Assembly (NCBI GenBank): GCA_002269645.1
Contig: NIVC01004164.1
Coordinates: 1-57,317 of the forward strand
DNA: 57,317 nucleotides
From: Macrostomum lignano
Taxonomy: Eukaryota
Reading direction: 5' to 3'
This document shows, one piece after another, positions 4,687 through 36,663 of the stretch. Below the pieces are notes generated by a model, which worked only from the letters and a program-made list of their open reading frames with translations, had not been told where the DNA came from and did not search any database. The stretch's first letter is position 1. Each line of letters opens with the position of its first letter. The translations under genes and the position numbers were made by a program.

Positions 4687-4825
4687 GGTCGTGAAGCAAT
4701 CCAAGTCGATGAGCTTGGAGATAATAAAGCGAGAAAGATCAGAGCTGATCATATCTAAGACGAGCCAGACTCGCATACCATCGCTACAATTATCGTGTGT
4801 GGCTTCTTCAAGACATAACACAAGG

Positions 4826-10100: not shown

Positions 10101-10359
10101 CTAGCTATAGAAAAAGAAAAAGAAGCCAATAACCTTCCTAATGAATAAATTAATTAATATTAGTTCAGTTGTGTATTTACTTTATATTTATTGTCATATG
10201 AATTATATACTTATATTGCATTTAGCCTAGGCCTATCTACTCTAGTCTGCCTATCCTCTACCTATGTTTGTTCTCTCAATCATTATATTTTTACTTTTTC
10301 CCTCTCTTAATTCCTTTATATCATGCTTCTCAATTATCTCCCATCTTTGCCCCTCCCCA

Positions 10360-11640: not shown

Positions 11641-11774
11641 ACCCTCCTGCTTTTCCTATCCTTCCCGCGTTATACTTTTCCCTATCCAGCCTCTACTATT
11701 CCCTCTTTCCACCTCCAGCGCCTCCCCCTCTCTAGCCCCTACCCTCTCTTCCTTTACTTTCCAGCCCCCATCCT

Positions 11775-14720: not shown

Positions 14721-14944
14721 GATGGAGGATGGTTTTTCTATTTATTCGACCGATTGAAGTATACACAACGTATATCGTCATTTAGTCAAGTTTTGAACCC
14801 AGTCATACAAAATATATATTTTTTCATTAATTTCTGTCAATCCTACGCGAAAAATCATAAATCATTTTGTTGCGATTTTGAGTGATTTATGGCCGCACCT
14901 GTCATCTTTTTACGACCCTGTGGGAACTGATAGGATCTCTCGGT

Positions 14945-15075
14945 CACGTGATTCTGGGTAGCAACGAGCTTAGCCAATCAGAAAATTCGGCGCTCATTTT
15001 AACAAAACGGCTCAGCCAATCAGAATCGACGTGTTCCGTTATAACAAACTACGGTCCAGTTGGCGGCTATTTAAA
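14945..15075 (+). promoter_or_regulatory. Pol II promoter-like cassette in the foldback spacer
   Basis: E-box cacgtg 14945-14950; two AGCCAATCAG boxes at 14972-14981 and 15014-15023; tatttaaa 15068-15075. Confidence 0.5.
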
Positions 15076-17700: not shown

Positions 17701-17830
17701 TTACTAACCAAAGAAATAAAATGTCTAGCTTTTGATGAGATTGTGAGACTACATGTACATTACAGTATACACATGTATAAACTATACTAGACAAACAACT
17801 ACACTACCAGCGTAGCTCGAATACACGTAC

Positions 17831-20800
17831 ACGTTGTGTATACTTCAATCGGTCGAATAAATAGAAAAACCATCCTCCATCAACTCCGCCCCTTCGATCC
17901 ACCTCCATCAGCTCCGCCCCTACCGCCCCCCATCAGCTCCGCCCCTACCGCCCCCCATCAGCTCCGCTCCTACCGCCCCCCATCAGCTCCGCCCCTCCAA
18001 AAGCTCCGCCGCTACCGCCCCCCATCAGCTCCGCCCCTCCAAAAGGTCCGCCCCAACGCCTCCCTTCATCAGCTCCTCTACGACAAAGTAATGGTTAAAC
18101 ACAGCGTGCAGCTCTAAGACAGCGAATATACAGTTATCAACAAATCATTCTCTAGGAAACTTGATCGACACAAATAATTGGCACCAGTATTGCTTTCGAC
18201 TACGTTAACGAGACGCGCCAATTCAAATAGGACGCCATACGAGATCTTTGCGAGTATTGCAAGACAACAGTGGCAGAAAAAGACTAGAGTGGGAAGTGAG
18301 TTGCTTGCTTCCTATTCAGGTTAGTATTTTGCGTTGGTCTAACTTGAGCCTGGGGCACAGACTGTGGTCAGGGAAAGAGCAGGGAAAGTGGAAGTAGGAA
18401 AAGTGACTCCAATTTTATTTACGTACCAAGATTTCCTTGGTTCTATCCGCGATCCGAAGATCAAATATACTAAGTCTGCGGAGCTCAGTCTGCTTTCCAT
18501 ATACTCGTACCTTTGCTTGAGGAGCATTTGGATCAGTGAGGAGTCTGGCTAAAGTCTCGTTTCGATTGCCAAAAGCGATACAGTATTACATTACAATGTA
18601 TTTCAAGCGATTAAACTGGTCAATGGGCTATAAGTTGCATTCAGCAACAGATTCATATTGAGGCCACACAATGTGACATTATTGGCACAATGTTACGTCA
18701 ATAAATGCAGAAGTATAGTATATAGTTGTAATACAGAAAAGCGACAATAGTTAGATAATGACATTGGAAATTGAATTTCGCGATAGTATTACACCAACGC
18801 CACACGGCATTAACGCCGAACGGTGAAAAGTTAAACACAAGAAAAATGCACGGACTTGAAAGTAAACGATTTGCTTGGTTGCGTCGGAATTAAATCAGTA
18901 AATCAGTAAGAAGCATACGCTTTTTAAATTGCGAGTACCCGGTATGCACCATCACAGTTCGCAGCTGGGCAAATTATTCTGAAGAGAAGAAGAATTACGA
19001 TTTTATTAGCAGAGCTACGAGAAGGGGAGCCGCCGGGGGAGGAGGGGCTAGGGAAAGAGGAGGGTATAAAAGGCTATTTAAAAACACTGTAGCAGACGGG
19101 TTATGCATGACACAGTAAGTAAAACAGAGAGGAGGGAAGAGCGTAACGAAGGGATAACCAAGGAGAGTAGAGGGTGGGCGCTGGAGTGGAGGAGAGGGAG
19201 GGCGCTGGAGTGGAGGAGAGGGAGGGCGCTGGAGTGGAGGAGAGGGAGGGCGCTGGAGTGGAGGAGAGGGAGGGCGCTGGAGTGGAGGAGAGGGAGGGCG
19301 CTGGAGTGGAGGAGAGGGAGGGCGCTGGAGTGGAGGAGAGGGAGGGCGCTGGAGTGGAGGAGAGGGAGGGCGCTGGAGTGGAGGAGAGGGAGGGCGCTGG
19401 AGTGGAGGAGAGGGAGGGCGCTGGAGTGGAGGAGAGGGAGGGCGCTGGAGTGGAGGAGAGGGAGGGCGCTGGAGTGGAGGAGAGGGAGGGCGCTGGAGTG
19501 GAGGAGAGGGAGGGCGCTGGAGTGGAGGAGAGAGAGGGCCCTGGAGTGGAGGAGAGGGAGGGCGCTGGAGTTGAGGAGAGGGAGGGCGCTGGAGTGGAGG
19601 AGAGGGAGGGCGCTGGAGTGGAAGAGAGGGAGGGCGCTGGAGTGGAAGAGAGGGAGGGCGCTGGAGTGGAAGAGAGGGAGGGCGCTGGAGTGGAAGAGAG
19701 GGAGGGCGCTGGAGTGGAGGAGAGGGAGGGCGCTGGAGTGGAGGAGAGGGAGGGCGCTGGAGTGGAGAGAGAGGGCCCTGGAGTGGAGGAGAGGGAGGGC
19801 GCTGGAGTGGAGGAGAGGGAGGGCGCTGGAGTGGAGTAGAGGATGGGGGCTGGAAAGTAAAGGAAGAGAGGGTAGGGGCTAGAGAGGGGGAGGCGCTGGA
19901 GGTGGAAAGAGGGAATAGTAGAGGCTGGATAGGGAAAAGTATAACGCGGGAAGGATAGGAAAAGCAGGAGGGTATGGAGAGCATAGGGAGGGCATAGAGG
20001 GTACAGGGAGTCCATGGGTGGGTATAGAAAAAGTATGGAGGGTATGGAGAGGTTATAAGGAGAGTATAGGGATGGTATGGAGGGTATAGGGATGGTATTG
20101 AGGGTATAGGAATGGTATGGAGGGTATAGGGATGGTATGGAGGGTATATGGAGGGTAAGAATGGGTATAGAAGGGTATGGAGGGTATAGGGAGAGTATTG
20201 AGGGTATATGGAAGGCATAGAGGGTACAAGGAGGCCATGTATGGGTATAGAAAAAATATGGAGGGTATGGAGAGTATATGGAGGGTATATGGAGGGTATA
20301 GAGGGTATAGGGAGAGTTTTGAGGGTATAAGGAGGGTATAGAGAATAGGAGGGAATGGAAGGGTAGAACGGGAGGGAATGGAAGGGTAGAACGGGAGGGA
20401 ATGGAGGGGGTAGAATGTGAGGGAATGGAAGGGTAGAATGGGAGGGAATGGAAGGGTAGAATGGGAGGGAATGGAGGGGGTAGAATGTGAGGGAATGGAG
20501 GGGTAGAATGGGAAGGAATAGAAGGGTAGAATGGGAAGGAATGGAAGGGTAGAATGGGAGGGAATGGAGGGGGTAGAATGTGAGGGAATGGAAGGGTAGA
20601 ATGGGAGGGAATGGTGGGGGTAGAATGGGAGGGAATGGAGGGGTAGAATGGGAAGGAATGGAAGGGTAGAACGGGAGGGAAAGGTGGGGTAGAATGGGAG
20701 ACACAGAAAAACTGCTTACTAGAACAAATATAATATTAAAGTACACCTTGCAACATTTTTGTTAGCATTAGCTAGATAGAGGCACCTGGAAAAGAGTTGG

Positions 20801-22306
20801 CAATATCCAACTATAACTTATTGAACTTAAGGTAGTTAAATAGTTCCATATTTTCTAGCTCTATAGTTTCGCCTTTTTGAAAGGTGCTTGAAATGCTGAA
20901 TTCAATTTTCCAATTTGAAATCCATTTCTAGATTTTGAATTGCCTTGGGTTTATAGCTTAAAACCCAAGGGTGAAAAGATTGAAGGGCAGGATGGCGGAA
21001 ATTGGGGGATAGGCAGGATAGGAAGGAATTGGGGGTGGGCAGGATAGGAGGGAATTGGGGGTGGGCAAGATAGGAGGGAATTGGGGGTGGGCAGGATAGG
21101 AGGGAATTGGGGGTGGGCAGGATAGGAGGGAATTGGGGGATAGGCAGGATAGAAGGGAATTGGGGAGGGGCAAAGATGGGAGATAATTGAGAAGCATGAT
21201 ATAAAGGAATTAAGAGAGGGAAAAAGTAAAAATATAATGATTGAGAGAACAGACATAGGTAGAGGATAGGCAGACTAGAGTAGATAGGCCTAGGCTAAAT
21301 GCAATATAAGTATATAATTCATATAACAATAAATATAAAGTAAATACACAACTGAACTAATATTAATTAATTTATTCATTAGGAAGGTTATTGGCTTCTT
21401 TTTCTTTTTCTATAGCTAGGCCTATACATTTCATAATATTGGCCTACAACAATTATTAGATTGTTAGACAAGAAGCATAAAATATAATAGGGTCTAAAAT
21501 AGCTAGCCTATTTTAGACCATATACATTTTATAGACTAATAATTTAGTAGGCCTACTCTTAATAGCTATAGGCCTATTACTAAAATAAAATAACATAGCT
21601 AGCTACCTATCATAGGCCTAAAATTGACAAGGCCTTTTGTGTTTCTTTTCATGGTACAAGTATAGAGTGATATTAAAATAAAGAATACAACTAAGAGCTA
21701 AAAAATTATACTAAATACCTGGCAATAAAGAAGAAAAACAAAGTAGATTAAAGCAGAATGCAGTACAAAATGGCCCACATATTGATAAGAAGGCCAATAT
21801 AAGGCCAATAACTGGGTGAGCCAAGGCCACCTAGCTAGCTAGCCATCAAGCTTTTACTTTTTTTAAAGCCAATTAATATCTGCCTGCAACAGGACCATTT
21901 CATCCTTATTGTCATTGTCAAGAGGTCCAAGTAGCTAGTTTATTTTACAATCATTAACCTCCTAATTAAATTTCATTCAGTCATGTCATACATGGCTTTT
22001 TGTGCAAGCTAGGGCGACACATTTCCAAAGTTTTCGACTCTAGACACAAACTGCTTTATTAGTCTAGGTCTTGAATTCATACATACTAACACAATGCCCT
22101 ATACTAATTAAATATGTCGAGCCATTATAATATTGGTTGTGCGTAGGCTTTTGAATTGCGCGCCATAACTGCCCAATACAAGTATATACAGTCCGCTTTT
22201 AATCAGAAGGAAAGCATGTTATGCTGGCAGTCGACATGCCATCTACCCTATCTAATCGTAGAAAACGTTTACCTTTTCTACCGATTAAATCCATGCTGGT
22301 CGGGTG
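17831..22306 (-). repeat. Right TIR arm (4476 bp)
   Basis: Starts acgttgtgtatacttcaatcgg; shorter than the left arm because internal arrays have fewer units. Confidence 0.93.
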
Positions 22307-22312
22307 ATACCG

Positions 22313-22435
22313 ATAATCGGCTATCTTCAAGTTTCGTTCGTTTAATTATTTCCGGAATTATTTCGCCCTCTATTCAAGGGTGGTGGGGGGTGGGTGTTAG
22401 AATTAAACGAACGAAACTTGAAGAAAGCCGATTAT
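22313..22435. mobile_element. Small ~123-bp inverted-repeat element (MITE-like)
   Basis: ataatcggctatcttcaagtttcgttcgtttaatt ... aattaaacgaacgaaacttgaagaaagccgattat; one mismatch; TSD not clear. Confidence 0.65.
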
Positions 22436-23779
22436 AGCTGGACAAGGCTAGGTTTAGGCCTAAATATATGAAAACTAAATGAATTTGGGCTAGGCAACAA
22501 TTATATTGCTAGCTAGCCTAGCCCAGCAGGTAGTAAGTAGGCCTACTTTTTGAATCTATTAAGTCTTTAATAAAATTTTATTTCAATCTTTATATCACTA
22601 ACTTTTTATACAATTAGCAACCTTTGTAGGCTTAATAAATGAATTATATTTAGAATTTTTTTAGAAATATTTAGAAAAGATAAAATATTCTTTTTTAAAT
22701 AATTTATTATTCATTAATAAAAAATAAAAATATCTAGCCTCTCTCTCTATCTCTCTCCCCTCATTGCACTTTGTGAGTGCTCTGCTGGATTGTGCAATCT
22801 ACTGTTAATCTATATATACATTTCTAACTTTTACCAACCCATTTTTGTCTAAATTGTTAAATATAAATAAATAAACAAATAAATTGTAACTAAATTTTAA
22901 GAGCCTGACAATGCCTGATGCAAGGCAAAACATTTTGCATAACAAAAAGTGATACTGATCGTCTGATAGTGCTCATGTTCTTAATTAGACTAAGATATTT
23001 GTCTCTACCTTTGTGTTTGTCTCTGTCTTTGTCTTTGTCTTATCTGTGTCCCTATCCCTATGCTTATCTTTGTCTTATCTGTGTCCCTATCCTTATGCTT
23101 GTCTTTATTTCTTTCCTTGCCCTTGTCTAGTGTTCTGCCATAAAGAGGGTCCATGTGCCATAGCCATAGCCATAAGCAAAACTATGGCTTATTCCGATTT
23201 TCTATATTCCATAGTTGTAGAAACCTCAATATTATTATATTCTTATAGTTCCCATAGCCTTAGCTATAGGCCTAGTTTTAAGAAAAGTCTAAGAAACAAA
23301 TATTTTGAACCACGAATATAACCTAGAACTTAAACAACTGCAAATTAAGGTAGAAAATAAAACAAACACTCAGTTGCCTTTATAAGATTATAACTCATCT
23401 TTATACAAAGAGTAATGATACTTAATCACTATTAAAAGTACTACTGCTGAACTTTTTGACATTAATAAAAGTTAGAGTTTGCTAATGTTTTATTGTACTT
23501 TATTAGATATAATTTATAAGTTTTTAAGTCTATAATATAGTTTACCAAAGTATCTTTGTTTTACTCTACCTATTTGTGTTTCTAATATTTTTTAATTTTT
23601 TTAAATTAATAACTATAGCTATGGGAATCTACAGAATATGACAGCAACTACCATATTTCTATAGTCATAGCCATAAGAGCAGCTAGCTACTGTAGGTGTA
23701 TCCATAGTTGCCGTAGGCACCTATTTTACTATATTTTCTATAGGATCCCATAGCCATAGTCATAGCTACGGCAAAACAA

Positions 23780-24272
23780 TACCCTTGTCCCTATCCCTGT
23801 CCTTGTTTCTATCATATCCCTGTCCTTGTTTTTATCATATCCCTGTCCTTGTTTCTATCATATCTCTGTCCTTATCCCTGTCCTTGTCCACCTTGTCTCT
23901 GTTCCTGCACCCATCCTTGTCCCCACCTTGTTCTTATCCCTGTCCCTGTAACTCTCATAGCTCCTATTCCTGTCCTGTCCTTGTCCATGTCATTGCTCCT
24001 ATTCTTGTCTCTGTCCCCATCATTGCTTCTATTCCTGTCCCTGTCACTGTCATTGCTTATATTTCCATCCCTATCCCTATCATTGCTTCTATCCCTGTCC
24101 CTGTCCCTGTCACTGTCATTGCTTATATCTCCATCCCTATCCCTATCATTGCTTCTATCCCTGTCCCTGTCCCTGTCACGGTCATTGCTTCTATTCCTGT
24201 CCCTGTCACTGTTATTGCTCCTATTCCTGTCCCTGTCCCTGTCACTGTTATTGCTCCTATTCCTGTCCCTGT
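23780..24272. repeat. Degenerate pyrimidine-rich repeat (cctgtc / attgcttctatccctgtccctgtc)
   Basis: Direct reading; similar low-complexity tract at ~23000-23130. Confidence 0.85.
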
Positions 24273-26089
24273 TGCCTGACTACCAAGCAGCCACTCAAAG
24301 GTCCAAATCCCCGCTGCAGTCCTGGCGTGAGCAGCTCGCCCACAGCTTGCTGGCGGCAGCAGCTGAGGCCACTGGCTGCGCGGCCCCCCAGCCGGCTTGG
24401 CTGGCGCAGCTGCCCCGCAGCTACAGCCGCTACGGCGACCTGGCGCTGTTCCCAGAGGGCACCCTGGACCACCCCAGCTTCGCCGAGCTGGCCGCCTCGG
24501 GCCGGCTGTGGCCGACCGTCTGCGGCTTACTGAAAGTTCGCCGGCTGGCCGTCGTTCGCCGCGTCGCCCGCGATGGAGTCCGGAGCTCGCGCAGCCGCTT
24601 GCTGTACACCGAGCCCGGCTGCGACCCCGCCAGCGCCACCGTGGCCACCTGCGTTGAGCACGGAGTCTCGTTATCCTGGGACATTGCCGACTGCATGTTC
24701 AGCCGGGGCAACGCGGCCGAGAGGCATCGCCTGGTGCCGCTGGTGGCAGCGGCCGCTGCTGATGGCAGCGAGTCCTGCATTGTTGATCTGTTTGCCGGTG
24801 AGATCAGGGCGTTCCTGACTTCAGTTATGCTATAACTTTAGGTTGCCCCGATCCCCGCAGCCTTAACTAGGTTATCCCCATTCCCATTGCCTCAGGTTAT
24901 CCCCATTCCCACAGCCTCAGGTTATCCCCATTCCCACAGCCTCAGGTTATCCCCATTCCCACAGCCTCAGGTTATCCCCATTCCCACAGCCTCAGGTTAT
25001 CCCCATTCCCACAGCCTCAGGTTATCCCCATTCCCACAGCCTCAGGTTATCCCCATTCCCACAGCCTCAGGTTATCCCCATTCCCACAGCCTCAGGTTAT
25101 CCCCATTCCCACAGCCTCAGTTTATCCCCATTCCCACAGCCTCAGGTTATCCCCATTCCCACAGCCTCAGGTTATCCCCATTCCCACAGCCTCAGGTTAT
25201 CCCCATTCCCACAGCCTCAGGTTATCCCCATTCCCACAGCCTCAGGTTATCCCCATTCCCACAGCCTCAGGTTATCCCTCCATTTGTATCCGCACCACCT
25301 GCGCACCCTGGCTCCCTGGCAGGCATCGGTTACTTCACGCTGCCGCTGCTGGCCCGCACCGGGATCGCCCAGGTGATCGCCATCGACTGGAACCCGGCTG
25401 CCCTGCGCTGGCTGCGCCGCAACCTGCAGAACAATCGCATCGGCGAGTCGCGCTGCCGCGTCCTGCAGGGCGACAACCGGCTGGTGGCGCCCGCCGACCT
25501 GGCGGACCGAGTGCTCCTGGGCCTCGTGCCCAGCTCCCGCCTGTCCTGGCCAGCCGCCTGCCGCTGCCTGCGGCCCGCCGGCGGCTGGCTGCACGTGCAC
25601 GAGAACTGCGACTCGCCCAGGGAGGCGACCGGCTGCAACAAAGACCATCCGAATGCTGATGGAAGCGACAAAGACTCCGAGGATGCTTCTAGAACTGACA
25701 AAGACCTGTCTGTTCGCGGGAGCAGCGATGGCGCCTTTGGCGGCTTAGCAATCACCTCTAATTGCTTCTACAAAGACCGCGCCGCAACAGCCGCTGCACA
25801 CGCGGCTTTCCTGAACTCTCCGCATGCGCCTGCAGCGGAGCTGCCGCCGCCAGACGCCGCTGACTGCGACGAGGACCCGCTGGCGGAAGCGGCCGAGACG
25901 CCACCAGTCTGCAGCCGGTCGCGCCCGCACCCGGCCTGGCTGTCCATGGCCGCCTCGATGGCGCGCGAACTTCGGCGCCACATGCCGCCTGGCTGGCGCG
26001 TCAGAGTGGCGCGCATCCAGTTCGTGAAATGGTACGCTCCCCGCGTGGCGCATCTCGTGTTTGATGTGGAGTGCCGACCGGCCGGCTGA
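24272..26089 (+). CDS. TRMT12: tRNA wybutosine-synthesizing protein 2 (TYW2/TRMT12, Met-10+-like); N-terminus not located
   Basis: Exons ~24272-24797 and 25323-26089 (GT 24798, AG 25321-25322, phase 1 gives VDLFAG|IGYFTLP). LPRSYSRYGDL, CMFSRGN, DWNP, GDNR, ADRVLLGLVPSS, GWLHVHEN, VKWYAPRVAHLVFDVECRP. Confidence 0.9.
24890..25278. repeat. 25-bp intronic array (cctcaggttatccccattcccacag)
   Basis: About 15 units inside the TYW2 intron. Confidence 0.95.
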
Positions 26090-26280
26090 CCCGACCGGCT
26101 TTGCCTACTGTCAGTAGCGTAGCAGGCGTTTTGAGTTTTAATAGTAGATTGATTAGTGCGTGGGTTTTCTAATTATGCTCGAATTTTTGCAATTGTTTGC
26201 ATTTTAATTGAAATATATGCTTCATGCATCCTTAAATATTTTACACTATGAAATAATGCTTTCATTTGTTTTTTATTTAA

Positions 26281-27687
26281 AACTACCACTCAATCCCTGA
26301 TCAGTCCCTGAGTCTGCCTGTCCACTCAATCCCTGATCAGTCCTTGAGTCTGCCTGTCCACTCAATCCCTGATCAGTCCCTGAGTCTGCCTGTCCACTCA
26401 ATCCCTGATCAGTCCCTGAGTCTGCCTGTCCACTCAATCCCTGATCAGTCCCTGAGTCTGCCTGTCCACTCAATCCCTGATCAGTCCCTGAGTCTGCCTG
26501 TCCACTCAATCCCTGATCAGTCCCAGAGTCTGCCTGTCCACTCAATCCCTGATCAGTCCCAGAGTCTGCCTGTCCACTCAATCCCTGATCAGTCCCTGAG
26601 TCTACCTGTCCACTCAATCCCTGATCAGTCCCTGAGTCTGCCTGTCCACTCAATCCCTGATCAGTCTTTGAGTCTGCCTGTCCACTCAATCCCTGATCAG
26701 TCCCTGAGTCTACCTGTCCACTCAATCCCTGATCAGTCCCTGAGTCTGCCTGTCCACTCAATCCCTGATCAGTCCCTGAGTCTGCCTGTCCACTCAATCC
26801 CTGATCAGTCCCAGAGTCTGCCTGTCCACTCAATCCCTGATCAGTCCCAGAGTCTGCCTGTCCACTCAATCCCTGATCAGTCCCAGAGTCTGCCTGTCCA
26901 CTCAATCCCTGATCAGTCCCAGAGTCTGCCTGTCCACTCAATCCCTGATCAGTCCCTGAGTCTACCTGTCCACTCAATCCCTGATCAGTCCCTGAGTCTG
27001 CCTGTCCACTCAATCCCTGATCAGTCCTTGAGTCTGCCTGTCCACTCAATCCCTGATCAGTCCCTGAGTCTGCCTGTCCACTCAATCCCTGATCAGTCCC
27101 AGAGTCTGCCTGTCCACTCAATCCCTGATCAGTCCCTGAGTCTGCCTGTCCACTCAATCCCTGATCAGTCCCTGAGTCTGCCTGTCCACTCAATCCCTGA
27201 TCAGTCCCAGAGTCTGCCTGTCCACTCAATCCCTGATCAGTCCCAGAGTCTACCTGTCCACTCAATCCCTGATCAGTCCCTGAGTCTGCCTGTCCACTCA
27301 ATCCCTGATCAGTCCCTGAGTCTGCCTGTCCACTCAATCCCTGATCAGTCCCAGAGTCTACCTGTCCACTCAATCCCTGATCAGTCCCAGAGTCTGCCTG
27401 TCCACTCAATCCCTGATCAGTCCCTGAGTCTGCCTGTCCACTCAATCCCTGATCAGTCCCAGAGTCTGCCTGTCCACTCAATCCCTGATCAGTCCCAGAG
27501 TCTGCCTGTCCACTCAATCCCTGATCAGTCCCAGAGTCTGCCTGTCCACTCAATCCCTGATCAGTCCCAGAGTCTACCTGTCCACTCAATCCCTGATCAG
27601 TCCCTGAGTCTACCTGTCCACTCAATCCCTGATCAGTCCCTGAGTCTACCTGTCCACTCAATCCCTGATCAGTCCCTGAGTCTGCCT
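26281..27687. repeat. 36-bp intergenic array (ccactcaatccctgatcagtccctgagtctgcctgt)
   Basis: About 39 head-to-tail units, no spacers. Confidence 0.97.
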
Positions 27688-27727
27688 CAAAAGCCGTCAA
27701 CCTGAAGCTCACCCCTCACTCTTGCAG

Positions 27728-30362
27728 CGGCAATCCCTTCAACAGCAGCAGCTGGCCGCTGCCCTCCGCCAGCTGGCTTTGCTTCTTCCACGGCGCCGAC
27801 TTGCTGGCAGCTCTTCGTCATCCTCATCCGCGCCCGCTGCCACTCCCGCCCCGGCCGAGCCTCAGCGCCGCCCCCGCCGACAGTCGCCGGCGGCCGCCGC
27901 AGCCGCCGCCTCGGACGCAGCAGCCGCTGCGGTCGGCGCTGCCCCCTCGCCTGATGGCGTCCGGTCGACTCGGCTGCTCACCAACTCGCTGATGGGGCTG
28001 GGCAGCTGGAAGACGCGGATCAACTATCCCATTCTGGAGCAGCAGAGCATGCGGCAGGGCAAGTTGGTGCCGCGCATCACCTGCCAGTATGTCGGCAGCT
28101 GCACCTCCCAGGGCCGGCGCCAGTACCAGGAGGACCGGCTGGTGTACAAAGACCTGCAGGTGCGCTGTTCTATTCGGGTCTTTCAGCTTCCCGTAACCTC
28201 CGTCTTCAGGTTCCCCCAGCCCGTAACCTCCCTGTCTTCAGGTCCCCCCAGCCCGTAACCTCCCTGTCTTCAGGTTCCCCCAGCCCGTAACCTCCCTGTC
28301 TTCAGGTCCCCCCAGCCCGTAACCTCCCTGTCTTCAGGTTCCCCCAACCCGTTACCTCCCTGTCTTCAGGTCCCCCAGCCCGTAACCTCCGTCTTCAGGT
28401 CCCCCCAGCCCGTAACCTCCCTGTCTTCAGGTTTCCCCAACCCGTAACCTCCGTCTTCAGGTTCCCCCAACCCGTTACCTCCCTGTCTTCAGGTCCCCCA
28501 GCCCGTAACCACCCTGTCTTCAGGTCCTCCCAGCCCGTAACCTCCGTCTTCAGGTCCCCCCAGCCCGTAACCACCCTGTCTTCAGGTCCTCCCAGCCCGT
28601 AACCTCCGTCTTCAGGTCCCCCAGCCCGTAACCTCCGTCTTCAGGTCCCCCCAGCCCGTAACCTCCCTGTCTTCAGGTTCCCCCAACCCGTATTGAAGTG
28701 TTCGGATACTTCAGCTTGCAATGTGGGAGATCGCTACAGATAATCTCCCTGCCGCACCCAGGAGAACCTGCTGTTCATCGGGATATTCGACGGTCACGGC
28801 GACGCTGCGGCCGCCGACTTCCTGGTGGAGCGCCTGCCGGACCTCGCGCACTTCTGGTGCCGCCAGCAGCCGCGCTTGGACGTGGCGCTCCGCCGCTCCT
28901 TCGTGGAGGCTAACAACCTGTTCCAGCGTCACCTGCAGCGGCTCAGCAGCGGCCAGGCCGGTCGTTTCGCCAGCGGCTCCACCGCCACCGTCTGCCTGCT
29001 GCGCAACTCCACCGAACTGGCTGTGGCCAACGTCGGCGACTCCAAAGCGGTGCTGTGCCGCTCCGGCCGGCCTGAGCTGCTGTCGGTGGACCACGACCCC
29101 GCCCTGGAGGAGGAGCAGGCCCGCATTCACGCCCGCGGCGGGGTCGTCACCTCCAACAGTCTAGGCAACCCCGTGGTCAACGGCCGCCTCAGCATGACCA
29201 GGTGAGGTTGGGGCATTCTGATTCGCCTTTGACCATGTCTGATCTCCTGTGTCTGATCCTGTGTCTGATCCGCCTCTCCCTGTGTCTGATCCGCCTCTAC
29301 CTGTGTCTGATCTGCCTCTACCTGTGTCTGATCTGCCTCTACCTGTGTCTGATCTGCCTCTACCTGTGTCTGATCCGCCTCTCCCTGTGTCTGATCCGCC
29401 TCTACCTGTGTCTGATCCGCCTCTCCCTGTGTCTGATCCGCCTCTACCTGTGTCTGATCCGCCCCTATCTAGATCTGATCCGTCCCCATTTACATGTAGA
29501 TCTGATCCGCCCCCCTTTTTACATGTAGATCTGATCCGCCCCCATTTACATGTAGATCTGATCCGCCCCCTTTTTACATGTAGATCTGATCCGCCCCCCT
29601 TTTTACATGTAGATCTGATCCGCCCCCCTTTTTACATGTAGATCTGATCCGCCCCCCTTTTTACATGTAGATCTGATCCGCCCCCCTTTTTACATGTAGA
29701 TCTGATCCGCCCCCCTTTTTACCAGGGGCGTAGCCAGGAATTTCCTACGGGGGGGGATACACCAAGGTGAATTTCCTACGGGGGGGGATACACCAAGGTA
29801 AAAGTGCTCACATGGTAGCATGTATAGCGAAAAAGTGCAACAAAAAAGTTTTGGTCAGGCTCTTCGGGGGGGGATACATCCCCCCTGATCCCCCCCCTCC
29901 CTACGCCACTGCTTTTTACATGTAGATCTGATCCGCCCCCCTTTTTACATGTAGATCTGATCCGCCCCCCTTTTTACATGTAGATCTGATCCGCCCCTCC
30001 GACTTTGCCCCATCCGCAGGTCCATCGGAGACTGCGAGATGAAGCCCTTCGGCGTGACGGCGCAGCCCCACCTGCGCTGTCTGGAGGTTCGGCACGGCCG
30101 CGACGCCTTCCTGCTGCTGGTGACAGACGGAGTGGCCTTCGTGATGAGCGTCAAGGAGATGGTGGACATCGCGTCGACCTGCGCCACGCCGCAGGAGGCC
30201 GCCGAGATCATCGTTGACCAGGCGATGCAGTTCGGCAGCGAGGACAACACCACGGCGGTGATCCTACCGTTCGGCTCCTGGGGCAAGTACGCCAAGCAGA
30301 TGAGCTGCATGCCCTACTCCATGGGCCGCAACTTCCTGGCTAACCGCTTCACTTCCAGCTGA
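27728..30362 (+). CDS. PPM1K: Mitochondrial PP2C-family phosphatase, PPM1K/PP2Cm orthologue
   Basis: Exons 27728-28159, 28762-29201, 30020-30362 with phase-compatible GT/AG junctions. GSWKTRINYPIL, GRRQYQEDR, IFDGHG, SGSTATVCLL, ANVGDSKAVLCR, VNGRLSMTRSIGD, LVTDG, GSEDNTTAVILPFGSWGKY. No ATG at the 5' end of the first exon. Confidence 0.92.
28190..28692. repeat. ~30-bp array in PPM1K intron 1 (cccgtaacctccctgtcttcaggtcccccag)
   Basis: Direct reading. Confidence 0.92.
29232..30000. repeat. Two arrays in PPM1K intron 2 (21-bp gtgtctgatccgcctctacct, then ~30-bp tacatgtagatctgatccgcccccctttt)
   Basis: Direct reading; second array interrupted by a MITE. Confidence 0.92.
29723..29911. mobile_element. 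189-bp hAT-type MITE
   Basis: Termini CAGGGGCGTAG / CTACGCCACTG; exact 8-bp TSD ctttttac at 29715-29722 and 29912-29919. Confidence 0.92.
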
Positions 30363-30445
30363 ACTGCCCCTGCTTGCCGGCTCTGCTTGCTTCTGCTGCT
30401 CTGAACAATTGCTTACTTCTAGGGGCTGGTCCGTTGCCCTGAGAG

Positions 30446-30578
30446 GGATCATGGGGTTGGTGGTGAGGGTGCGGCTCAGGGAGTGAAGGATCATGGGGTT
30501 GGTGGTGAGGGTGCGGCTCAGGGAGTGAAGGATCATGGGGTTGGTGGTGAGGGTGTGGCTGAGGGAGTGAAGGACCAT
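30446..30578. repeat. 42-bp repeat x3 downstream of PPM1K
   Basis: gatcatggggttggtggtgagggtgcggctcagggagtgaag. Confidence 0.9.
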
Positions 30579-31094
30579 GAAGTCAAGTTGAAGCGACGCG
30601 AATCGCTCAGATCTAAATTTTTTTGTAAAAATTTATAGTTGTTTTTGTCGTATATTATTGTTAAAATTCGACGCGTCTACTGTCAGTAGTTTACCAATTT
30701 TTAACTATGGTGTCATTAGCAGCTGTTGCGTCAGTAGTTTTGCATTCTTGCGGCATTCAATACTGACAATAGTATAAATTCGATTAAACTACCTGTGAAC
30801 AAGACTGACTGTGCGTGAGTCTTTGTACTTATACAATATACTTATCTCATTCATAATGTACTTTGCACTATCAGACATTAGCAGCCAGACAGATTTAAGG
30901 CACTGTGTGATTCCCAGCCTACAGTGTATTTTTATTTTTGCCTTTTACTCGTATACACAGGTCGGCAAGAATCTCAAATAAACGGATCCACGATGTGGCG
31001 TCTCGCGCCGACTCCAGCATCGCTTCCTTATCGGATTTCGCCACCTTATCTGTGTTGCTTTTATTCTGCCAGTCCGATCCACTCGGACCATCCC

Positions 31095-31481
31095 CCCATG
31101 TACACCCGCCACTATCAGCCACCCAGCCCTCCCCCAATGTACACTCGCCACTATCAGCCACTCAGCCCCTCCCCCAATGTACACTCGCCACTATCAGCCA
31201 CTCAGCCCCTCACCCAATGTACACTCGCCACTATCAGCCACTCAGCCCCTCCCCCAATGTACACTCGCCACTATCAGCCACTCAGCCCCTCACCCAATGT
31301 ACACTCGCCACTATCAGCCACTCAGCCCCTCCCCCAATGTACACTCGCCACTATCAGCCACTCAGCCCCTCCCCCAATGTACACTCGCCACTATCAGCCA
31401 CTTAGCCCCTCCCCCAATGTACACTCGCCACTATCAGCCACTCAGCCCCTCCCCCAATGTACACTCGCCACTATCAGCCAT
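31095..31481. repeat. 40-bp array upstream of the DUF1295 gene
   Basis: tacactcgccactatcagccactcagcccctcccccaatg, about 9-10 units. Confidence 0.93.
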
Positions 31482-31526
31482 AAAACTTTCCCTTCCCACC
31501 TCCTGCTGTCCCACCTGAGCTCCGCA

Positions 31527-32915
31527 ATGGGTAACGCAGTTATCAAGCTGACAGGCCTCAGCATGGGGATCCAGTGGGCCTGCTTTCCCGTGGCCTACTA
31601 CCTGGGCACCGAGAAATTCTACGACATCGCCGGAGCTGTCACCCACCTCGCCCTGCTGGGATTCGCCACCAAGCGGCTGTTCCCTCCAGTTGGGCTGCGC
31701 GGCTGGGCGCCCGTCTGCATGGCCGGCCTGTGGACCCTTCGGCTGGGATGCTTCCTGGGCTACCGCGGCCTGCGCTCCGGTGACCGCCGATTCAACCGGA
31801 TCAAGGTGAGGGCATAGTTCAGGTGGTGTATATTAACTACCTGTTTCCTAATTTCGCTTAAACGTCTTATTATCTACCTGAATTCCAATGATATCAAACT
31901 AATCAAATCAAGCCCCAGCTTAATTGGGGTCCTAATCATCCCCAACTCTAATTATCCCTAACCCTAATCTCCCCAACCCTAATATCCCTAACCCTAATCT
32001 CCCGAACCCTAATCATCCCCAGCCCTAATCCCTTCCTTAATTATCCCCAACCCTTATCATCCCAAACCCTAATCCCATCCTTAATTATCCCCAACTCTAA
32101 TCATCCCGAACCCTAATCCTATCCTTAATTATCCCCAACTCTAATCATCCCGAACCCTAATCCTATCCTTAATTATCCCCAACTCTAATCATCTCGAACT
32201 CTATTCCCATCCTTAATTATCCTCAATTCTAATCATCTCGAACCCTAATCCTACCCTTAATTATCCCCAAATCTAATGATCCCGAACCCTAATCCCATCC
32301 TTAATTATCCTCAACTCTAATCATCTCGAACCCTAATCCTACACTTAATTATCCCCAAATCTAATCACCCCGAATCCCCAACCGGCATCTCCCCATCGCC
32401 AGACTCAGCCGGGCGCCTTCCTAGCCGCCTGGACCATGCAGGGCGCGTGGGCGCTGGGCAACCTGGCGCCAACCCTCACCGCTCTGGCCTGCATGTCGGC
32501 CGCCGGTGCCGCAGCGGCCCGCCGTCCGGTGTGCCTGCGCGAGCAGCTGGGCTGGGCGCTGTTCTGCTTCGGCCTGACCATCGAGGCCGTGGCCGACTGG
32601 CAGAAGCTGGCCTTCAGGTCCGACCCGGACAACGCCAGGCGCTTCATCTCCAGCGGGCTGTGGGCTCGCAGCCGGCACCCGAACTACTTTGGCGAGCTGT
32701 GCCTGTGGGCGGGCCTCGCCGCCTCCGCCTCCGCAAGCTTCAGCCGGCCGCTGCACTGGGCGAGCCTGGCCGGGCCGGTGCTGAACTCCTGCCTGGTGCT
32801 GTTCGTGTCCGGCCTGCCGCTGCTGGAGGCCGCGGCCAGGAAGCGTTGGGGCTCCGACCCCGCCTACCAGGAGTACGAGAGCCGGACTCCCCTGCTGGTG
32901 CCGCGCCTGTTCTAG
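31527..32915 (+). CDS. DUF1295 / steroid 5-alpha-reductase-like integral membrane protein
   Basis: Exons 31527-31805 and 32403-32915 (phase 0, RFNRIK|TQPGAF). TEKFYDIAG, LRLGCFLGYR, GDRRF, EAVADWQKLAF, FISSGLWARSRHPNYFGE, FVSGLPLLE, WGSDPAYQEY. Confidence 0.9.
31915..32385. repeat. Degenerate CCCTAA-containing intronic array
   Basis: ccctaaccctaatc and aaccctaatcc variants filling the DUF1295 intron. Confidence 0.75.
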
Positions 32916-33039
32916 GCTGCTGACCTTCCACTGACAAGACTTCTGTGTCCGCGTAGATTTAAACGATTCTTATCCTGATCGGGCTTTGATTTTGATGCTT
33001 GATTTATCTGGGGGTCGAGATTTTGATGAGATCTTTAAG

Positions 33040-33245
33040 TCAACTCTCTTAAAAGGGTGAGATTTTGAAGTTCCCATCTGATTGGGGTGAGATTTTGAAG
33101 TTCCCATCTGATTGGGGTGAGATTTTGAAGTTCCTATGTGATTGGGGTGAGATTTTGAAGTTCCTATGTAATTGGGGTGAGATTTTGAAGTTCCCATCTG
33201 ATTGGGTGAGATTTTGAAGTTCCCATCTGATTGGGGTGAGATCTG
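33040..33245. repeat. 30-bp array (gattttgaagttcccatctgattggggtga)
   Basis: About 6 units. Confidence 0.9.
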
Positions 33246-33611
33246 GCAGTTTGGAGTTTCTATATCGTCAGGATGAATCCGTTTAAGTTTTTGACGTTTT
33301 CTTCAAAATTGTGTTCTGAGAAATGCTTTAGAATGATTGGCCCAATGTGCACTGCTTAAATTCACTCGGAGATTTGATATTAAATTTGAGTCCTGTCTCC
33401 TACATGGCTTCTTTGTGAGTTGAGTTTTCTGGACTGTGGACTGTCTGATATCGATAAGACCGGAGCTGATTTGCTATTTTTATCAATGCGGTTCAATTTA
33501 AATTTTTCATTTCCACCTTAATTTTAGTATAAAAAAATATACCATCAACTTAGACCAACTTGTTCAATTTAGTTTTTCAATCCAATTCTAATCAGTCGCT
33601 TGTTCAGTAAG

Positions 33612-34282
33612 TCTGCCAGAACAAAGACCGCAGTGCACCAGTCACCTATTAATCAACGCCCAGGATTGCACCAGAACAAAGACCGCAGTGCACCAGTCAC
33701 TTATTCACCAGTGCCCAATATTACACCAGAACAAAGACCGCAGTGCACCAGTCACTTATTCACCAGTGCCCAAGATTACACCGGAACAAAGACCGCAGTG
33801 CACCAGTCACTTATTCATCAGTTCCCAAGATTACACCAGAACGAAGACCGCAGTGCACCAGTCACTTATTCACCAGTGCCCAAGATTACACCAGAACGAA
33901 GACCGCAGTGCACCAGTCACTTATTCACCAGTGCCCAAGATTACACCAGAACAAAGACCGCAGTGCACCAGTCACTTATTCACCAGTTCCCAAGATTACA
34001 CCAGAACGAAGACCGCAGTGCACCAGTCACTTATTCACGAGTGCCCAATATTACACCAGAACAAAGACCGCAGTGCACCAGTCACTTATTCACCAGTGCC
34101 CAAGATTACACCAGAACAAAAACCGCAGTGCACCAGTCACTTATTCACCAGTGCCCAAGATTACACCAGAACAAAGACCGCAGTGCACCAGTCACATATT
34201 CACCAGTGCCCAAGATTACACCAGAACAAAGACCGCAGTGCACCAGTCATTCACCAGTGCCCAGGCTCACACCAGAACAAAG
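33612..34282. repeat. 55-bp array upstream of the fourth gene
   Basis: gaccgcagtgcaccagtcacttattcaccagtgcccaagattacaccagaacaaa, about 12 units. Confidence 0.93.
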
Positions 34283-34303
34283 AATCCGCCGCTCTCCCCG
34301 CAG

Positions 34304-36663
34304 TCCCAGTCAGCCGCCGAGGAATCCGTCGATGTCGCCAGCCGGGCTTGCTGCTGCGCCGACGTTCTGCGTCGAGCCGGGACGTCGCCAATGGCGGTCT
34401 CCGTCGAGGGCCTCTGCGAGTGGGCGGTGGCCGACCTGCACTGCCGCACCTGGCCGGGCGCCTGCCGCCAACTGCCACCACCGCCGCTGCCGCCAACAAC
34501 GTCGCAGTCGATCAAGTCGCTGTCGGAGGCCGTTGCCGCCGATGATGCGGCGCTACTGAGCCGCCTTCTGCTGGAAGGCGCGGTCGCAGCCGACTCGAAG
34601 GAGGCGGACGCCCTGCTGGCTGAGGCGGCCGGCCGCGGCCTGGCCGGAGTCTGCCACCAGCTGCTGCTGTCGCTGACGCCGCCGCCCACCGAGGAGGGGC
34701 GCGAAGCTGCGCTGATGGCGGCTGCGGAGACCGGCGCCGTCGTGAGCTGCGCCGTCTTGCTGGGCCACGGCGTTCGTCCGCGTCAACCTGCGCTACGTCT
34801 GGCGCTGGCGTCCGGTTGCCAAGCAACCGTCCTGCTGCTGCTGCGCGCAGGGGCGCCTTTCAGCGCATCTGGACTGGTGAGGATTCTGAAACGCTGCCGG
34901 GTGGGTTGCGTTGGAAATGGCCTTTCATTGTGCTCGTAACTACAGTGACAAAATCTGATTGGTGAGTGACAGTCTGATTGGTTAGAGTGACAGTCTGATT
35001 GGCCGAGTGACAGTCTGATTGGCCGAGTGACAGTCTTATATTGGCCGAGTGACAGTCTGATATTGGCCGAGTGACAGTCTGGTTGCCCGAGTGACAGTCT
35101 GATTGGCCGAGTGACACTCTGATTGGCGGAGTGACAGTCTGATATTGGCCGAGTGACATTCTGATTGGCGGAGTGACAGTCTGATTGGCGGAGTGACAGT
35201 CTGATTGGCGGAGTGACAGTCTGATTGGCCGAGTGACATTCTGATTGGCGGAGTGACAGTCTGATTGGCGGAGTGACAGTCTGATTGGCGGAGTGACAGT
35301 CTGATTGGCGGAGTGACAGTCTGATTGGCGGAGTGACAGTCTGATTGGCCGAGTGACAATCTGATTGGTGGAGTGACAGTCTGATTGGCCGAGTGACAGT
35401 CTGATTGGCCGAGTGACAGTCTGATTGGCCGAGTGACAGCCTGATTGGCCGAGTGACACTCTGATTGGCGGAGTGACAGTCTGATATTGGCCGAGTGACA
35501 GTCTGATTGGCCGAGTGACAGTCTGATTGGCCGAGTGACAGTCTGATTGGCCGAGTGACAGTCTGATTGGCCGAGTGACACTCTGATTGGCGGAGTGACA
35601 GTCTGATATTGGCCGAGTGACATTCTGATTGGCGGAGTGACAGTCTGATTGGCCGAGTGACAATCTGATTGGCGGAGTGACAGTCTGATTGGCCGAGTGA
35701 CAGCCTGATTGGCCGAGTGACAGTCTGATATTGGCCGAGTGACAGTCTGATTGGCCGAGTGACAGTCTGATTGGCCGAGTGACAGTCTGATTGGCCGAGT
35801 GACAGTCTGATTGGCCGAGTGACAGTCTGATTGGCCGAGTGACAGTCTGATTGGCCGAGTGACAGTCTGATTGGCCGAGTGACACTCTGATTGGCGGAGT
35901 GACAGTCTGATATTGGCCGAGTGACATTCTGATTGGCGGAGTGACAGTCTGATTGGCCGAGTGACAATCTGATTGGCGGAGTGACAGTCTGATTGGCCGA
36001 GTGACAGTCTGGTTGGCCGAGTGACAGTCTGATTGGCCGAGTGACAGTCTGATTGGCCGAGTGACACTCTGATTGGCCGAGTGACAGTCTGATTGGCCGA
36101 GTGACAATCCCTGCTGCCCAATTTCGAATTTCCAGTCGCCCAGCTTCGGCCTGAGCTGCCCTACCTGGCCGCAGCCGCAGGCGCTACTGGACTGGTCAGC
36201 GCAGCACCTGGCCGCCTGCGTCGCCGAGCTCAGGCGCGCAATTCCCCGTCTGCGCGTCCTCTGCTACCTGCTGTCCGGCCAGCACCCGCGCGGCCCCGTG
36301 CTAGTGGAGCCCGACCGCGTCGCTGTGGACCTCTGCCTGGATGCCATTCCGGCCGCAGACGGGGCTCTGGGCGGCTCCCAGCAGCTGCTGGTGCTGGCGA
36401 CTTGCCTGGTGGGTTACACTGGCTACCCCGCACCACTGATCCGCCTGTGGCCCTGCGTCGCCTTCGCCGAGCTCAACAGCAGCGGCGTCGACGCGCTGGT
36501 GCCGATGCCGAAGTGGCCAGGCGGCGGCGTCCACCGGCTGTCGGGCCTGCAGCCGGAGCGCGGCTGCCTGCTGCGGGTGGCGATGGCGCCGGAGAGACTG
36601 CGGCTGCCGCGCTACCGCTTCCTGCTGGCCGCCTTCCAGGTCGAGCTGCCCGCGTCCGGCTGA
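34304..36663 (+). CDS. Uncharacterised protein with ankyrin-like helical repeats
   Basis: Exons 34304-34876 and 36136-36663 join in phase 0 without stops; exon-like GC content. LMAAAETGAVVSCAVLLGHG and LALASGCQATVLLLLRAGA resemble ankyrin repeats. Family not recognised. Confidence 0.65.
34955..36107. repeat. 20-bp intronic array (ctgattggccgagtgacagt)
   Basis: Roughly 55-57 units filling the intron. Confidence 0.96.

What the first reader, a model, noticed from the sequence alone, without database searches (positions are those of the whole stretch)
24272..36663. Candidate four-gene trans-spliced operon: TYW2 - PPM1K - DUF1295 - ankyrin-like
Seen: four plus-strand genes separated by only 1.2-1.6 kb, each gap being a short AT-rich tract plus a minisatellite. 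Each downstream gene opens with a polypyrimidine-AG acceptor (27727, 31519, 34303) with no convincing upstream donor. Known: flatworms resolve polycistronic transcripts of housekeeping genes by spliced-leader trans-splicing. Inference: this is one such operon. Caveat: at DUF1295 a leader AUG would open a 5-codon out-of-frame uORF over the genomic ATG.
Basis: partly seen in the sequence, partly recalled or inferred. Interest (0 to 1): 0.75.

Follow-up and report, generated by a model that had tools for sequence, protein, structure and literature searches.

The report
Flatworm trans-spliced operon, already annotated
This is a cluster of four same-strand genes in the flatworm Macrostomum lignano that is very probably read as one long RNA and cut into separate messages by spliced-leader trans-splicing, a mechanism already documented genome-wide in this species.

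Summary
The window is a whole contig (NIVC01004164.1) of the published Macrostomum lignano Mlig_3_7 assembly. The four plus-strand genes are real. They are TYW2, PPM1K, DUF1295 and an orphan with a weak ankyrin-like stretch, and my splice models reproduce the GenBank proteins. Gap lengths vary only through minisatellite copy number. The unique part is 236, 621 and 532 bp, under the published 1-kb operon threshold for this species. GenBank locus tags place PPM1K, DUF1295 and gene 4 in one RNA-seq transcriptional unit at two paralogous loci, and DUF1295 plus gene 4 in one unit here. TYW2 is always a separate unit, so its membership is plausible but unproven. Its 5' end is about 24320, not 24272. 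The M. lignano spliced leader ends in ATG. That ATG is in frame at TYW2, PPM1K and gene 4, and TYW2 and PPM1K have no usable genomic start codon. No spliced-leader reads could be examined here. The kind of system is already known, so interest is low.

The parts
22307..24319 (+). Candidate outron and promoter region upstream of TYW2. It is AT-rich (33-35% GC) with pyrimidine-rich minisatellites at 23792-24272, and ends in the acceptor CTGCAG (CAG at 24317-24319).
   Evidence: The acceptor is identical in all three paralogous copies and matches the published trans-splice motif [T/C]TNCAG (PMC8629364). No annotated gene lies within 7.5-10 kb upstream in L002 or L003.
24320..26089 (+). Gene 1, TYW2 (tRNA wybutosine-synthesizing protein 2; GenBank PAA48368.1, Mlig026930g2). 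Exons 24320-24797 and 25323-26089. The intron is filled by a 25-bp minisatellite. There is no genomic start codon, and an SL AUG would be in frame (M-SWREQL...).
   Evidence: The first in-frame genomic Met is residue 127, an invariant column inside the conserved domain.
26090..27727 (+). Gap 1. A 196-bp AT-rich tract (the likely TYW2 3'UTR), then a 36-bp minisatellite (26286-27687, 39 copies), then 40 bp ending in the acceptor TTGCAG (27722-27727).
   Evidence: The unique part is 236-239 bp in all three copies, while the total gap is 1638, 702 and 388 bp. There are no GTRAG donors.
27728..30362 (+). Gene 2, PPM1K-like mitochondrial PP2C phosphatase (PAA48369.1, Mlig022618g1). Exons 27728-28159, 28762-29201 and 30020-30362. 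The frame is open from the acceptor, and the first 89 codons contain no ATG. They encode an Arg/Ala/Leu/Ser-rich sequence that looks like a mitochondrial presequence.
   Evidence: The N-terminus of Haliotis PPM1K aligns from residue 12 of the acceptor-start model. Five of 6 differences between paralogous copies fall at codon position 3.
30363..31519 (+). Gap 2. It holds a 42-bp minisatellite (30446-30579), an AT-rich tract with ATTAAA at 30783 and AATAAA at 30977, and a 40-bp minisatellite (31079-31480). The acceptor is CCTGAG (AG at 31518-31519).
   Evidence: The unique part is 621 bp in all three copies. One non-repeat consensus donor lies at 30815.
31520..32915 (+). Gene 3, DUF1295 membrane protein (PAA48370.1, Mlig003492g1). 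Exons 31520-31805 and 32403-32915. It has its own ATG at 31527 in a strong context (GCAATGG). An SL AUG would open a 5-codon overlapping uORF.
   Evidence: (the 263-aa model using acceptor 32403 is an exact database match).
32916..34303 (+). Gap 3. It holds a 30-bp minisatellite (33055-33242), an AT-rich tract, and a 55-bp minisatellite (33616-34283). The acceptor is CCGCAG (34301-34303).
   Evidence: The unique part is 525-533 bp in all three copies. Consensus donors lie at 33415 and 33607.
34304..36663 (+). Gene 4, an orphan protein with a weak ankyrin-like stretch (PAA48371.1, Mlig003492g2). Exons 34304-34876 and 36136-36663. The intron is filled by a 20-bp minisatellite. The frame is open from the acceptor, and the first genomic ATG is at 34391.
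   Evidence: (the 364-aa model is an exact match). Six of 8 differences between paralogous copies in the 87-nt stretch before the ATG fall at codon position 3.

Best explanation
This is a Macrostomum lignano spliced-leader (SL) trans-spliced operon of at least three genes (PPM1K, DUF1295, gene 4). TYW2 is probably its first cistron.

Proposed mechanism:
- A polycistronic precursor is transcribed on the + strand.
- Each upstream message is cleaved and polyadenylated in the AT-rich tract after its stop codon.
- The 35-nt SL (CGGTCTCTTACTGCGAAGACTCAATTTATTGCATG) is trans-spliced onto the acceptors at 27727/27728, 31519/31520 and 34303/34304. This removes the minisatellite-bearing spacer in the same way an intron is removed.
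- TYW2 is itself trans-spliced, at 24319/24320.
- The SL's terminal AUG serves as the start codon for TYW2 and PPM1K, which have no usable genomic AUG, and probably for gene 4. At DUF1295 the SL AUG is bypassed by leaky scanning to the gene's own strong AUG.

What is shown: gene structures, acceptor positions, reading frames, gap anatomy, and the transcriptional-unit grouping in the public annotation.
What is inferred: SL addition at these exact sites, a single promoter, TYW2 membership, and use of the SL AUG.
For: - Species and SL. The window is M. lignano contig NIVC01004164.1. The SL sequence ends in ATG. Thirty percent of genes are trans-spliced and 15% are in operons. Operon spacers in this species are inflated by repeats, and the repeat-adjusted mode is about 100 bp with a 1-kb threshold (PMC8629364).
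- Transcriptional-unit (TU) grouping. PPM1K, DUF1295 and gene 4 are Mlig015070g1, g2 and g3 on contig NIVC01000151. They are Mlig000047g3, g4 and g2 on NIVC01000514. DUF1295 and gene 4 are Mlig003492g1 and g2 here. Genes that share a prefix are cut from one RNA-seq TU at SL and poly(A) signals (PMC5730564).
- 5' ends. All 11 annotated coding sequences at the three loci begin 3-21 nt after the same conserved acceptors. None has an upstream exon, and nine are flagged 5'-partial; the exceptions are L002's complete DUF1295 and L003's truncated PPM1K, which starts internally. An independent UniProt model of PPM1K starts exactly at 27728 (P0123).
- Gaps. The unique part of each gap is constant at 236, 621 and about 530 bp, while minisatellite length varies 149-1402 bp. 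Gap 1 is only 388 bp in total in L003. Gap 1 has no GTRAG donor.
- Start codons. TYW2 has no in-frame Met before invariant residue 127. PPM1K has none for 89 codons, although that stretch aligns to the N-terminus of a full-length homologue. The SL AUG is in frame at three of the four acceptors.
- Coding signal. Eleven of 14 differences between paralogous copies in the stretches lacking an ATG fall at codon position 3 (binomial p of about 7e-4, my own calculation).
Against: - No SL-containing read, poly(A) tag or 5'-end read was inspected here.
- The annotated 5' ends are 3-21 nt downstream of the AG rather than exactly at it, and they do not follow an AG themselves. They may therefore be set by read coverage rather than by SL reads.
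- TYW2 is a separate TU in all three copies, and PPM1K is a separate TU in this contig.
- TU merging by StringTie/TACO can also come from read-through or overlapping UTRs.
- The raw gaps of 1.2-1.6 kb are long for operons.
- Gaps 2 and 3 contain 370-500 bp of AT-rich unique sequence and consensus donors (30815, 33415, 33607). These could belong to independent promoters and 5' exons.
- The acceptors of gene 3 (TGAG) and gene 4 (CCGCAG) do not match the top trans-splice motif.
- Sixty percent of trans-spliced M. lignano genes are not in operons.
Confidence: 0.65

Rival explanations
1. The operon has three genes. TYW2 is an independently transcribed upstream neighbour that may itself be trans-spliced, and the operon promoter lies between TYW2 and PPM1K.
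For: TYW2 carries its own TU prefix (Mlig026930g1, g2, g3) at all three loci, whereas the other three genes share prefixes.
Against: The unique sequence between the TYW2 stop codon and the PPM1K acceptor is only 236-239 bp, and it must also hold the TYW2 3'UTR. The whole gap is 388 bp in L003. The authors state that TUs tend to break in repeat-rich operon spacers (PMC8629364), and this gap is up to 86% minisatellite.
Confidence: 0.3
2. The four genes are independent monocistronic genes. Each has its own promoter in the AT-rich tract and an outron containing the minisatellite. They are trans-spliced but not co-transcribed.
For: The raw gaps are 1.2-1.6 kb with 200-500 bp AT-rich tracts. Sixty percent of trans-spliced M. 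lignano genes are not in operons (PMC8629364). Four co-oriented genes occur by chance about 1 time in 8.
Against: Non-homologous neighbours share TU prefixes at all three loci. The repeat-adjusted gaps are below the 1-kb threshold.
Confidence: 0.15
3. These are conventional cis-spliced genes whose first exons, carrying 5'UTR and ATG, lie unannotated in the gaps. The minisatellites are first introns and there is no trans-splicing.
For: Consensus GTRAG donors lie at 30815, 33415 and 33607. Every other minisatellite inside these genes is intronic.
Against: Gap 1 has no GTRAG donor. None of the 11 RNA-seq-based models has an upstream exon. tblastn with homologue N-termini finds no TYW2 upstream exon. 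PPM1K is already full length when read from the acceptor.
Confidence: 0.05

Closest known systems
Macrostomum lignano SL trans-spliced operons (Wudarski et al. 2017, TU Mlig030697 with g1 and g2; Ustyantsev & Berezikov 2021)
   Same: Same species and same 35-nt SL. The genes are same-strand neighbours. The spacers are inflated by tandem repeats, with repeat-adjusted distances under 1 kb. Genes cut from one transcriptional unit share a locus-tag prefix. A size of 3-4 genes is within the published range of 2-9.
   Different: Nothing essential differs. Four-gene operons are a minority, since 75% have two genes and 18% have three. TYW2 is not joined to the others in the annotation. This locus is not described individually in any paper I could search.
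Caenorhabditis elegans operons (SL2 trans-splicing)
   Same: A polycistronic precursor is resolved by 3' end formation coupled to SL trans-splicing of the downstream cistron. The repeat-adjusted modal spacer is about 100 bp.
   Different: M. lignano has a single SL with no SL1/SL2 specialisation (PMC8629364). The raw spacers here are 10-15 times longer because of minisatellites. The nematode SL does not supply a start codon.
Flatworm SL 3'-terminal AUG used as initiator methionine (Cheng et al. 2006, as cited in PMC12582326)
   Same: The SL ends in AUG. At TYW2, PPM1K and gene 4 the acceptor places that AUG in frame with an open reading frame, and two of these genes have no usable genomic start codon.
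   Different: Translation from the SL AUG is not demonstrated for these genes. At DUF1295 the SL AUG is out of frame and would create a short overlapping uORF.
Operons and chimeric gene models in parasitic flatworms (Protasio 2012; Calvelo et al. 2025, PMC12582326)
   Same: Neighbouring cistrons get fused by gene predictors. UniProt holds fused M. lignano models of 1072, 680 and 916 aa across this locus.
   Different: The fused models here are ab initio artefacts. One translates the 55-bp minisatellite, and another skips a stop codon. I therefore did not count them as evidence of a precursor RNA.

Membership tests
M. lignano SL trans-spliced operon (criteria of Ustyantsev & Berezikov 2021) | Immediately adjacent genes on the same strand, not interrupted by a gene on the opposite strand | tested here: met
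   The GenBank gene table shows four consecutive + strand genes at all three paralogous loci. The next gene, a CUE-domain gene, is convergent.
M. lignano SL trans-spliced operon (criteria of Ustyantsev & Berezikov 2021) | Repeat-adjusted intergenic distance below 1 kb | tested here: met
   Stop-to-acceptor distance minus TRF arrays is 236, 621 and 532 bp in the window. The values are the same within 7 bp in L002 and L003. These are upper bounds because they include the 3'UTRs.
M. lignano SL trans-spliced operon (criteria of Ustyantsev & Berezikov 2021) | The downstream gene carries the SL at its 5' end (SL-containing reads map to its first exon) | not testable with these tools
   The evidence is only indirect. 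Annotated coding sequences start 3-21 nt after conserved AG acceptors, most are 5'-partial, and none has an upstream exon. The TUs were cut at these points by the TBONE pipeline, which uses SL and poly(A) signals. No reads were accessible.
M. lignano SL trans-spliced operon (criteria of Ustyantsev & Berezikov 2021) | Co-transcription as one precursor from one promoter | tested here: inconclusive
   A shared TU prefix links PPM1K, DUF1295 and gene 4 at two loci, and DUF1295 and gene 4 here. TYW2 is always a separate TU. No promoter data were available.
SL-AUG-initiated flatworm mRNAs (Cheng et al. 2006) | The SL ends in AUG, and the acceptor places it in frame with the ORF with no intervening stop | tested here: met
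   The SL sequence comes from PMC8629364. The AUG is in frame at 24320, 27728 and 34304, and out of frame at 31520.
SL-AUG-initiated flatworm mRNAs (Cheng et al. 2006) | No usable genomic AUG upstream of the conserved part of the protein | tested here: met
   In TYW2 the first Met is invariant residue 127. In PPM1K the first Met is at codon 90, and the upstream in-frame stretch back to the stop at 27677 has no ATG. Gene 4 and DUF1295 have their own ATGs.
SL-AUG-initiated flatworm mRNAs (Cheng et al. 2006) | Translation actually starts at the SL AUG | not testable with these tools
   The only support is the third-codon-position bias of differences between paralogous copies in the stretches lacking an ATG: 5 of 6 in PPM1K and 6 of 8 in gene 4.

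The most novel reading that the evidence does not exclude
Trans-splicing at this locus does more than resolve an operon. TYW2 and PPM1K have lost their own initiation codons, so the spliced leader's terminal AUG is the only way to start translation. For PPM1K this includes the mitochondrial presequence, which begins directly at the splice junction. Protein output would then be strictly gated by SL addition. If so, the many '5'-partial' coding sequences in the GenBank annotation of this genome would be a symptom of a widespread class of genes that depend on the SL AUG, rather than incomplete models.
Probability: 0.55. Interest if true: 0.35.

Novelty: already known. Interest (0 to 1): 0.2.

Why it matters
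It matters little beyond confirmation. SL trans-splicing and operons, including spacers bloated by repeats, were described genome-wide for M. lignano in 2017 and 2021. The public annotation already treats three of these genes as products of one transcriptional unit.

The locus is a tidy worked example in three respects:
- Minisatellite copy number alone changes spacer length up to four-fold between paralogous copies, while the unique spacer sequence stays fixed.
- Two conserved enzymes have no genomic start codon and apparently rely on the SL's AUG.
- Gene predictors fuse such cistrons into chimeric proteins.

These points are useful for annotators and for people choosing promoters for transgenesis in this model.

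Tried and rejected
- Rfam scan of the whole window. It gave only a sub-threshold MIR2646 hit at 6800-7037 and no SL RNA.
- tRNA scan. Nothing found.
- Search for the SL 3' half in the window with up to 3 mismatches. No match, so there is no SL RNA gene here.
- tblastn of the N-terminal 110 aa of nine TYW2 homologues against the window. Nothing scored better than E = 0.037 and nothing fell upstream of TYW2. The N-terminal domain seen in other metazoan TYW2 proteins is either absent or undetectable.
- Searches for the locus tags in the paper library and in supplements of three papers. No tag was found.
- UniProt fused models P0122, P0124 and P0128. I considered them as evidence for polycistronic RNA and rejected them. 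P0128 translates the 55-bp minisatellite as protein. P0122 comes from the L003-type copy and skips the segment carrying its premature stop codon. They are therefore ab initio artefacts.
An SL AUG there is out of frame, and both annotations start further downstream.
- Homologue searches for gene 4. They returned only M. lignano copies and one weak ankyrin-repeat hit.
- An early idea that the organism might be a mollusc-like lophotrochozoan, because the best PPM1K hits were molluscs at 52% identity. The 100% TYW2 match overturned it.

Full report
**What the sequence is.** The region has GC-rich exons (60-65%), AT-rich tracts after each stop codon, and many minisatellites. Introns are canonical GT-AG. 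I built splice models for four + strand genes. A protein search with gene 1 returned a 100%-identical Macrostomum lignano TYW2. Cluster look-ups showed that the 57,317-bp window is an entire contig of the published Mlig_3_7 assembly, GCA_002269645.1 NIVC01004164.1. Four consecutive genes are annotated on it:

| Gene | GenBank protein | Locus tag | Length | CDS span |
|---|---|---|---|---|
| TYW2 | PAA48368.1 | Mlig026930g2 | 411 aa | 24329-26089 |
| PPM1K-like PP2C | PAA48369.1 | Mlig022618g1 | 400 aa | 27740-30362 |
| DUF1295 | PAA48370.1 | Mlig003492g1 | 264 aa | 31524-32915 |
| Orphan (gene 4) | PAA48371.1 | Mlig003492g2 | 364 aa | 34310-36663 |

My internal splice sites reproduce these proteins exactly. 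Pfam confirms TRM5/TYW2 methyltransferase and DUF1295, and gives only a below-cutoff Ank_2 match for gene 4. Gene 2 is 45-52% identical to mollusc PPM1K. Gene 4 has no detectable relatives outside M. lignano apart from one weak ankyrin-repeat hit.

**Check of the observation.** The gaps measure 1638, 1157 and 1388 bp from stop codon to acceptor. Each is an AT-rich unique tract plus minisatellites. Three corrections are needed.
- Consensus GTRAG donors are absent only from gap 1. Gap 2 has one at 30815, and gap 3 has them at 33415 and 33607.
- The pyrimidine tracts are no stronger than those of the internal introns.
- Position 24272 is merely the end of a minisatellite. The TYW2 frame has no ATG there.

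For TYW2, the acceptor CTGCAG|TCC (exon start 24320) fits the evidence better. It is identical in all three copies and matches the published trans-splice motif [T/C]TNCAG. It lies 3 nt after the start of the UniProt model and 9 nt before the start of the GenBank model.

**What is known for this species.** The M. lignano spliced leader (SL) is CGGTCTCTTACTGCGAAGACTCAATTTATTGCATG. [quoted passage not shown] Operon spacers are inflated by repeats. After subtracting repeats the modal spacer is about 100 bp, and 1 kb is used as the operon threshold (PMC8629364). The GenBank annotation derives from RNA-seq transcriptional units (TUs). The TBONE pipeline cuts these into genes at experimentally mapped SL and poly(A) signals (PMC5730564). 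[quoted passage not shown] All flatworm SLs end in AUG, which can act as an initiator (Cheng et al. 2006, cited in PMC12582326).

**Evidence at this locus.**

(a) TU grouping. Two paralogous loci keep the same four-gene order, followed by a convergent CUE-domain gene.

| Locus | PPM1K | DUF1295 | Gene 4 | TYW2 |
|---|---|---|---|---|
| NIVC01000151 (L002) | Mlig015070g1 | Mlig015070g2 | Mlig015070g3 | Mlig026930g1 |
| NIVC01000514 (L003) | Mlig000047g3 | Mlig000047g4 | Mlig000047g2 | Mlig026930g3 |
| Window | Mlig022618g1 | Mlig003492g1 | Mlig003492g2 | Mlig026930g2 |

The public annotation therefore already treats the three downstream genes as products of one TU. TYW2 has its own prefix everywhere.

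(b) 5' ends. Across 11 annotated models, the coding sequence begins 3-21 nt downstream of the same conserved acceptor. No model has an upstream exon, and nine are flagged 5'-partial; L002's DUF1295 is complete from its own ATG and L003's truncated PPM1K begins at an internal ATG. The UniProt PPM1K model begins exactly at 27728. The small offsets do not follow an AG, so I cannot tell whether these ends were set by SL peaks or by read coverage. This is a real weakness.

(c) Gaps. The unique part of each gap is invariant among the three copies (236-239, 621 and 525-533 bp). Minisatellite content varies from 149 to 1402 bp. Gap 1 is only 388 bp in total in L003. All gaps pass the published criterion.

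(d) Start codons. TYW2 has no in-frame Met before residue 127, which is an invariant column of the conserved domain. PPM1K has none for 89 codons, yet that stretch corresponds to the N-terminus of full-length homologues. It is Arg/Ala/Leu/Ser-rich with no acidic residue in its first 44 positions, as expected for the presequence of a mitochondrial enzyme. The SL AUG falls in frame at 24320, 27728 and 34304.

(e) Coding signal in the stretches lacking an ATG. Differences between paralogous copies there sit at codon position 3 in 5 of 6 cases for PPM1K and 6 of 8 cases for gene 4. Together that gives a binomial p of about 7e-4 by my calculation. These stretches therefore evolve as coding sequence in the frame set by the acceptor.

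**Interpretation.** The most likely reading is an SL-resolved operon of at least three genes, which I rate at about 0.65-0.75. TYW2 would be its first, itself trans-spliced, cistron, which I rate at about 0.5. The spacer minisatellites sit exactly where intron minisatellites sit, between a short unique flank and the acceptor. This is consistent with their being removed from the mature RNA.

The main rival is that TYW2 is transcribed separately. That leaves only about 236 bp for both its 3'UTR and a promoter. The authors themselves note that TUs break in repeat-rich spacers. Fully independent promoters, or unannotated cis-spliced first exons, are less likely but not excluded for genes 3 and 4, because consensus donors exist in those gaps.

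**Comparison and novelty.** Every testable criterion of the published M. lignano operon definition is met. SL reads and promoter use could not be tested here. Nothing departs from the known system, so I rate the finding as already known and of low interest. The most novel reading still open is strict dependence of TYW2 and PPM1K on the SL's AUG for initiation. That is an instance of a phenomenon shown in schistosomes in 2006.

**Dead ends.** The Rfam, tRNA and SL-gene scans were negative. No TYW2 upstream exon was found by tblastn. The locus tags appear in no searchable paper or supplement. The fused UniProt models were rejected as evidence because they are ab initio artefacts.

Noticed in passing
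window 9214-22306: A 13.1-kb insertion is absent from both paralogous loci. It has terminal inverted repeats of about 4.7 kb (9214-13949 against 17977-22306, 99-100% complementary) that are packed with strongly G/C-skewed minisatellites. Its termini read CACCCGACCAGCATGG..., and it is flanked by a 7-bp target-site duplication, ATACCGA. Its 4-kb centre holds frameshifted Tc1/mariner-like transposase fragments (about 16.8-17.7 kb). It looks like a giant transposon with long inverted repeats, and it lies only about 2 kb upstream of the TYW2 acceptor.
   Followed up: partly
window 24869-25278, 28190-28692, 29236-29997, 31941-32374, 34954-36106, and the three gaps: Every intron and every intergenic spacer of the cluster is largely filled by a different minisatellite (units of 20-55 bp), leaving only 20-135 bp of unique flank at the splice sites. 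Copy number differs between paralogous copies while the unique flanks are conserved. For example, the 36-bp array is 1402, 466 and 149 bp in the three copies.
   Followed up: partly
L003 (NIVC01000514.1) 12250-12681, equivalent to window 27728-28159: The PPM1K copy at this paralogous locus carries a premature stop in exon 1 (CAG to TAG, reading ...GSCTS*GRRQYQ). GenBank therefore annotates only a 116-aa C-terminal fragment, PAA81748.1. This is either a decaying duplicate or a sequencing error.
   Followed up: partly
UniProt models P0122 (1072 aa), P0124 (680 aa) and P0128 (916 aa), mapping to window about 24317-36663: Gene models from the older ML2 annotation fuse TYW2+PPM1K+DUF1295, PPM1K+DUF1295, and DUF1295+gene 4 into chimeric proteins. 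One translates the 55-bp minisatellite as protein. At 90% identity these chimeras also cause unrelated proteins to fall into a single database cluster.
   Followed up: yes
window 24320-24797 (TYW2 exon 1): M. lignano TYW2 lacks the N-terminal domain of about 90 aa that is present in fish and most other animal TYW2 proteins. No exon encoding it could be found anywhere in the window.
   Followed up: partly
window 1238-6200 and 6800-7037: An LTR-retrotransposon-like gag ORF with a CCHC zinc knuckle lies at 1238-2206. A hairpin at 6800-7037 (- strand) gives a sub-threshold match to the plant MIR2646 family (97 bits against a gathering score of 245). It is probably an inverted repeat derived from a transposon and not a microRNA.
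   Followed up: no
L003 15720-15742, equivalent to window 31498-31519: The L003 copy has a substitution (ctcctg to ctccag) that creates an extra AG acceptor 18 nt upstream of the DUF1295 acceptor. The fused UniProt models use this AG.
   Followed up: no
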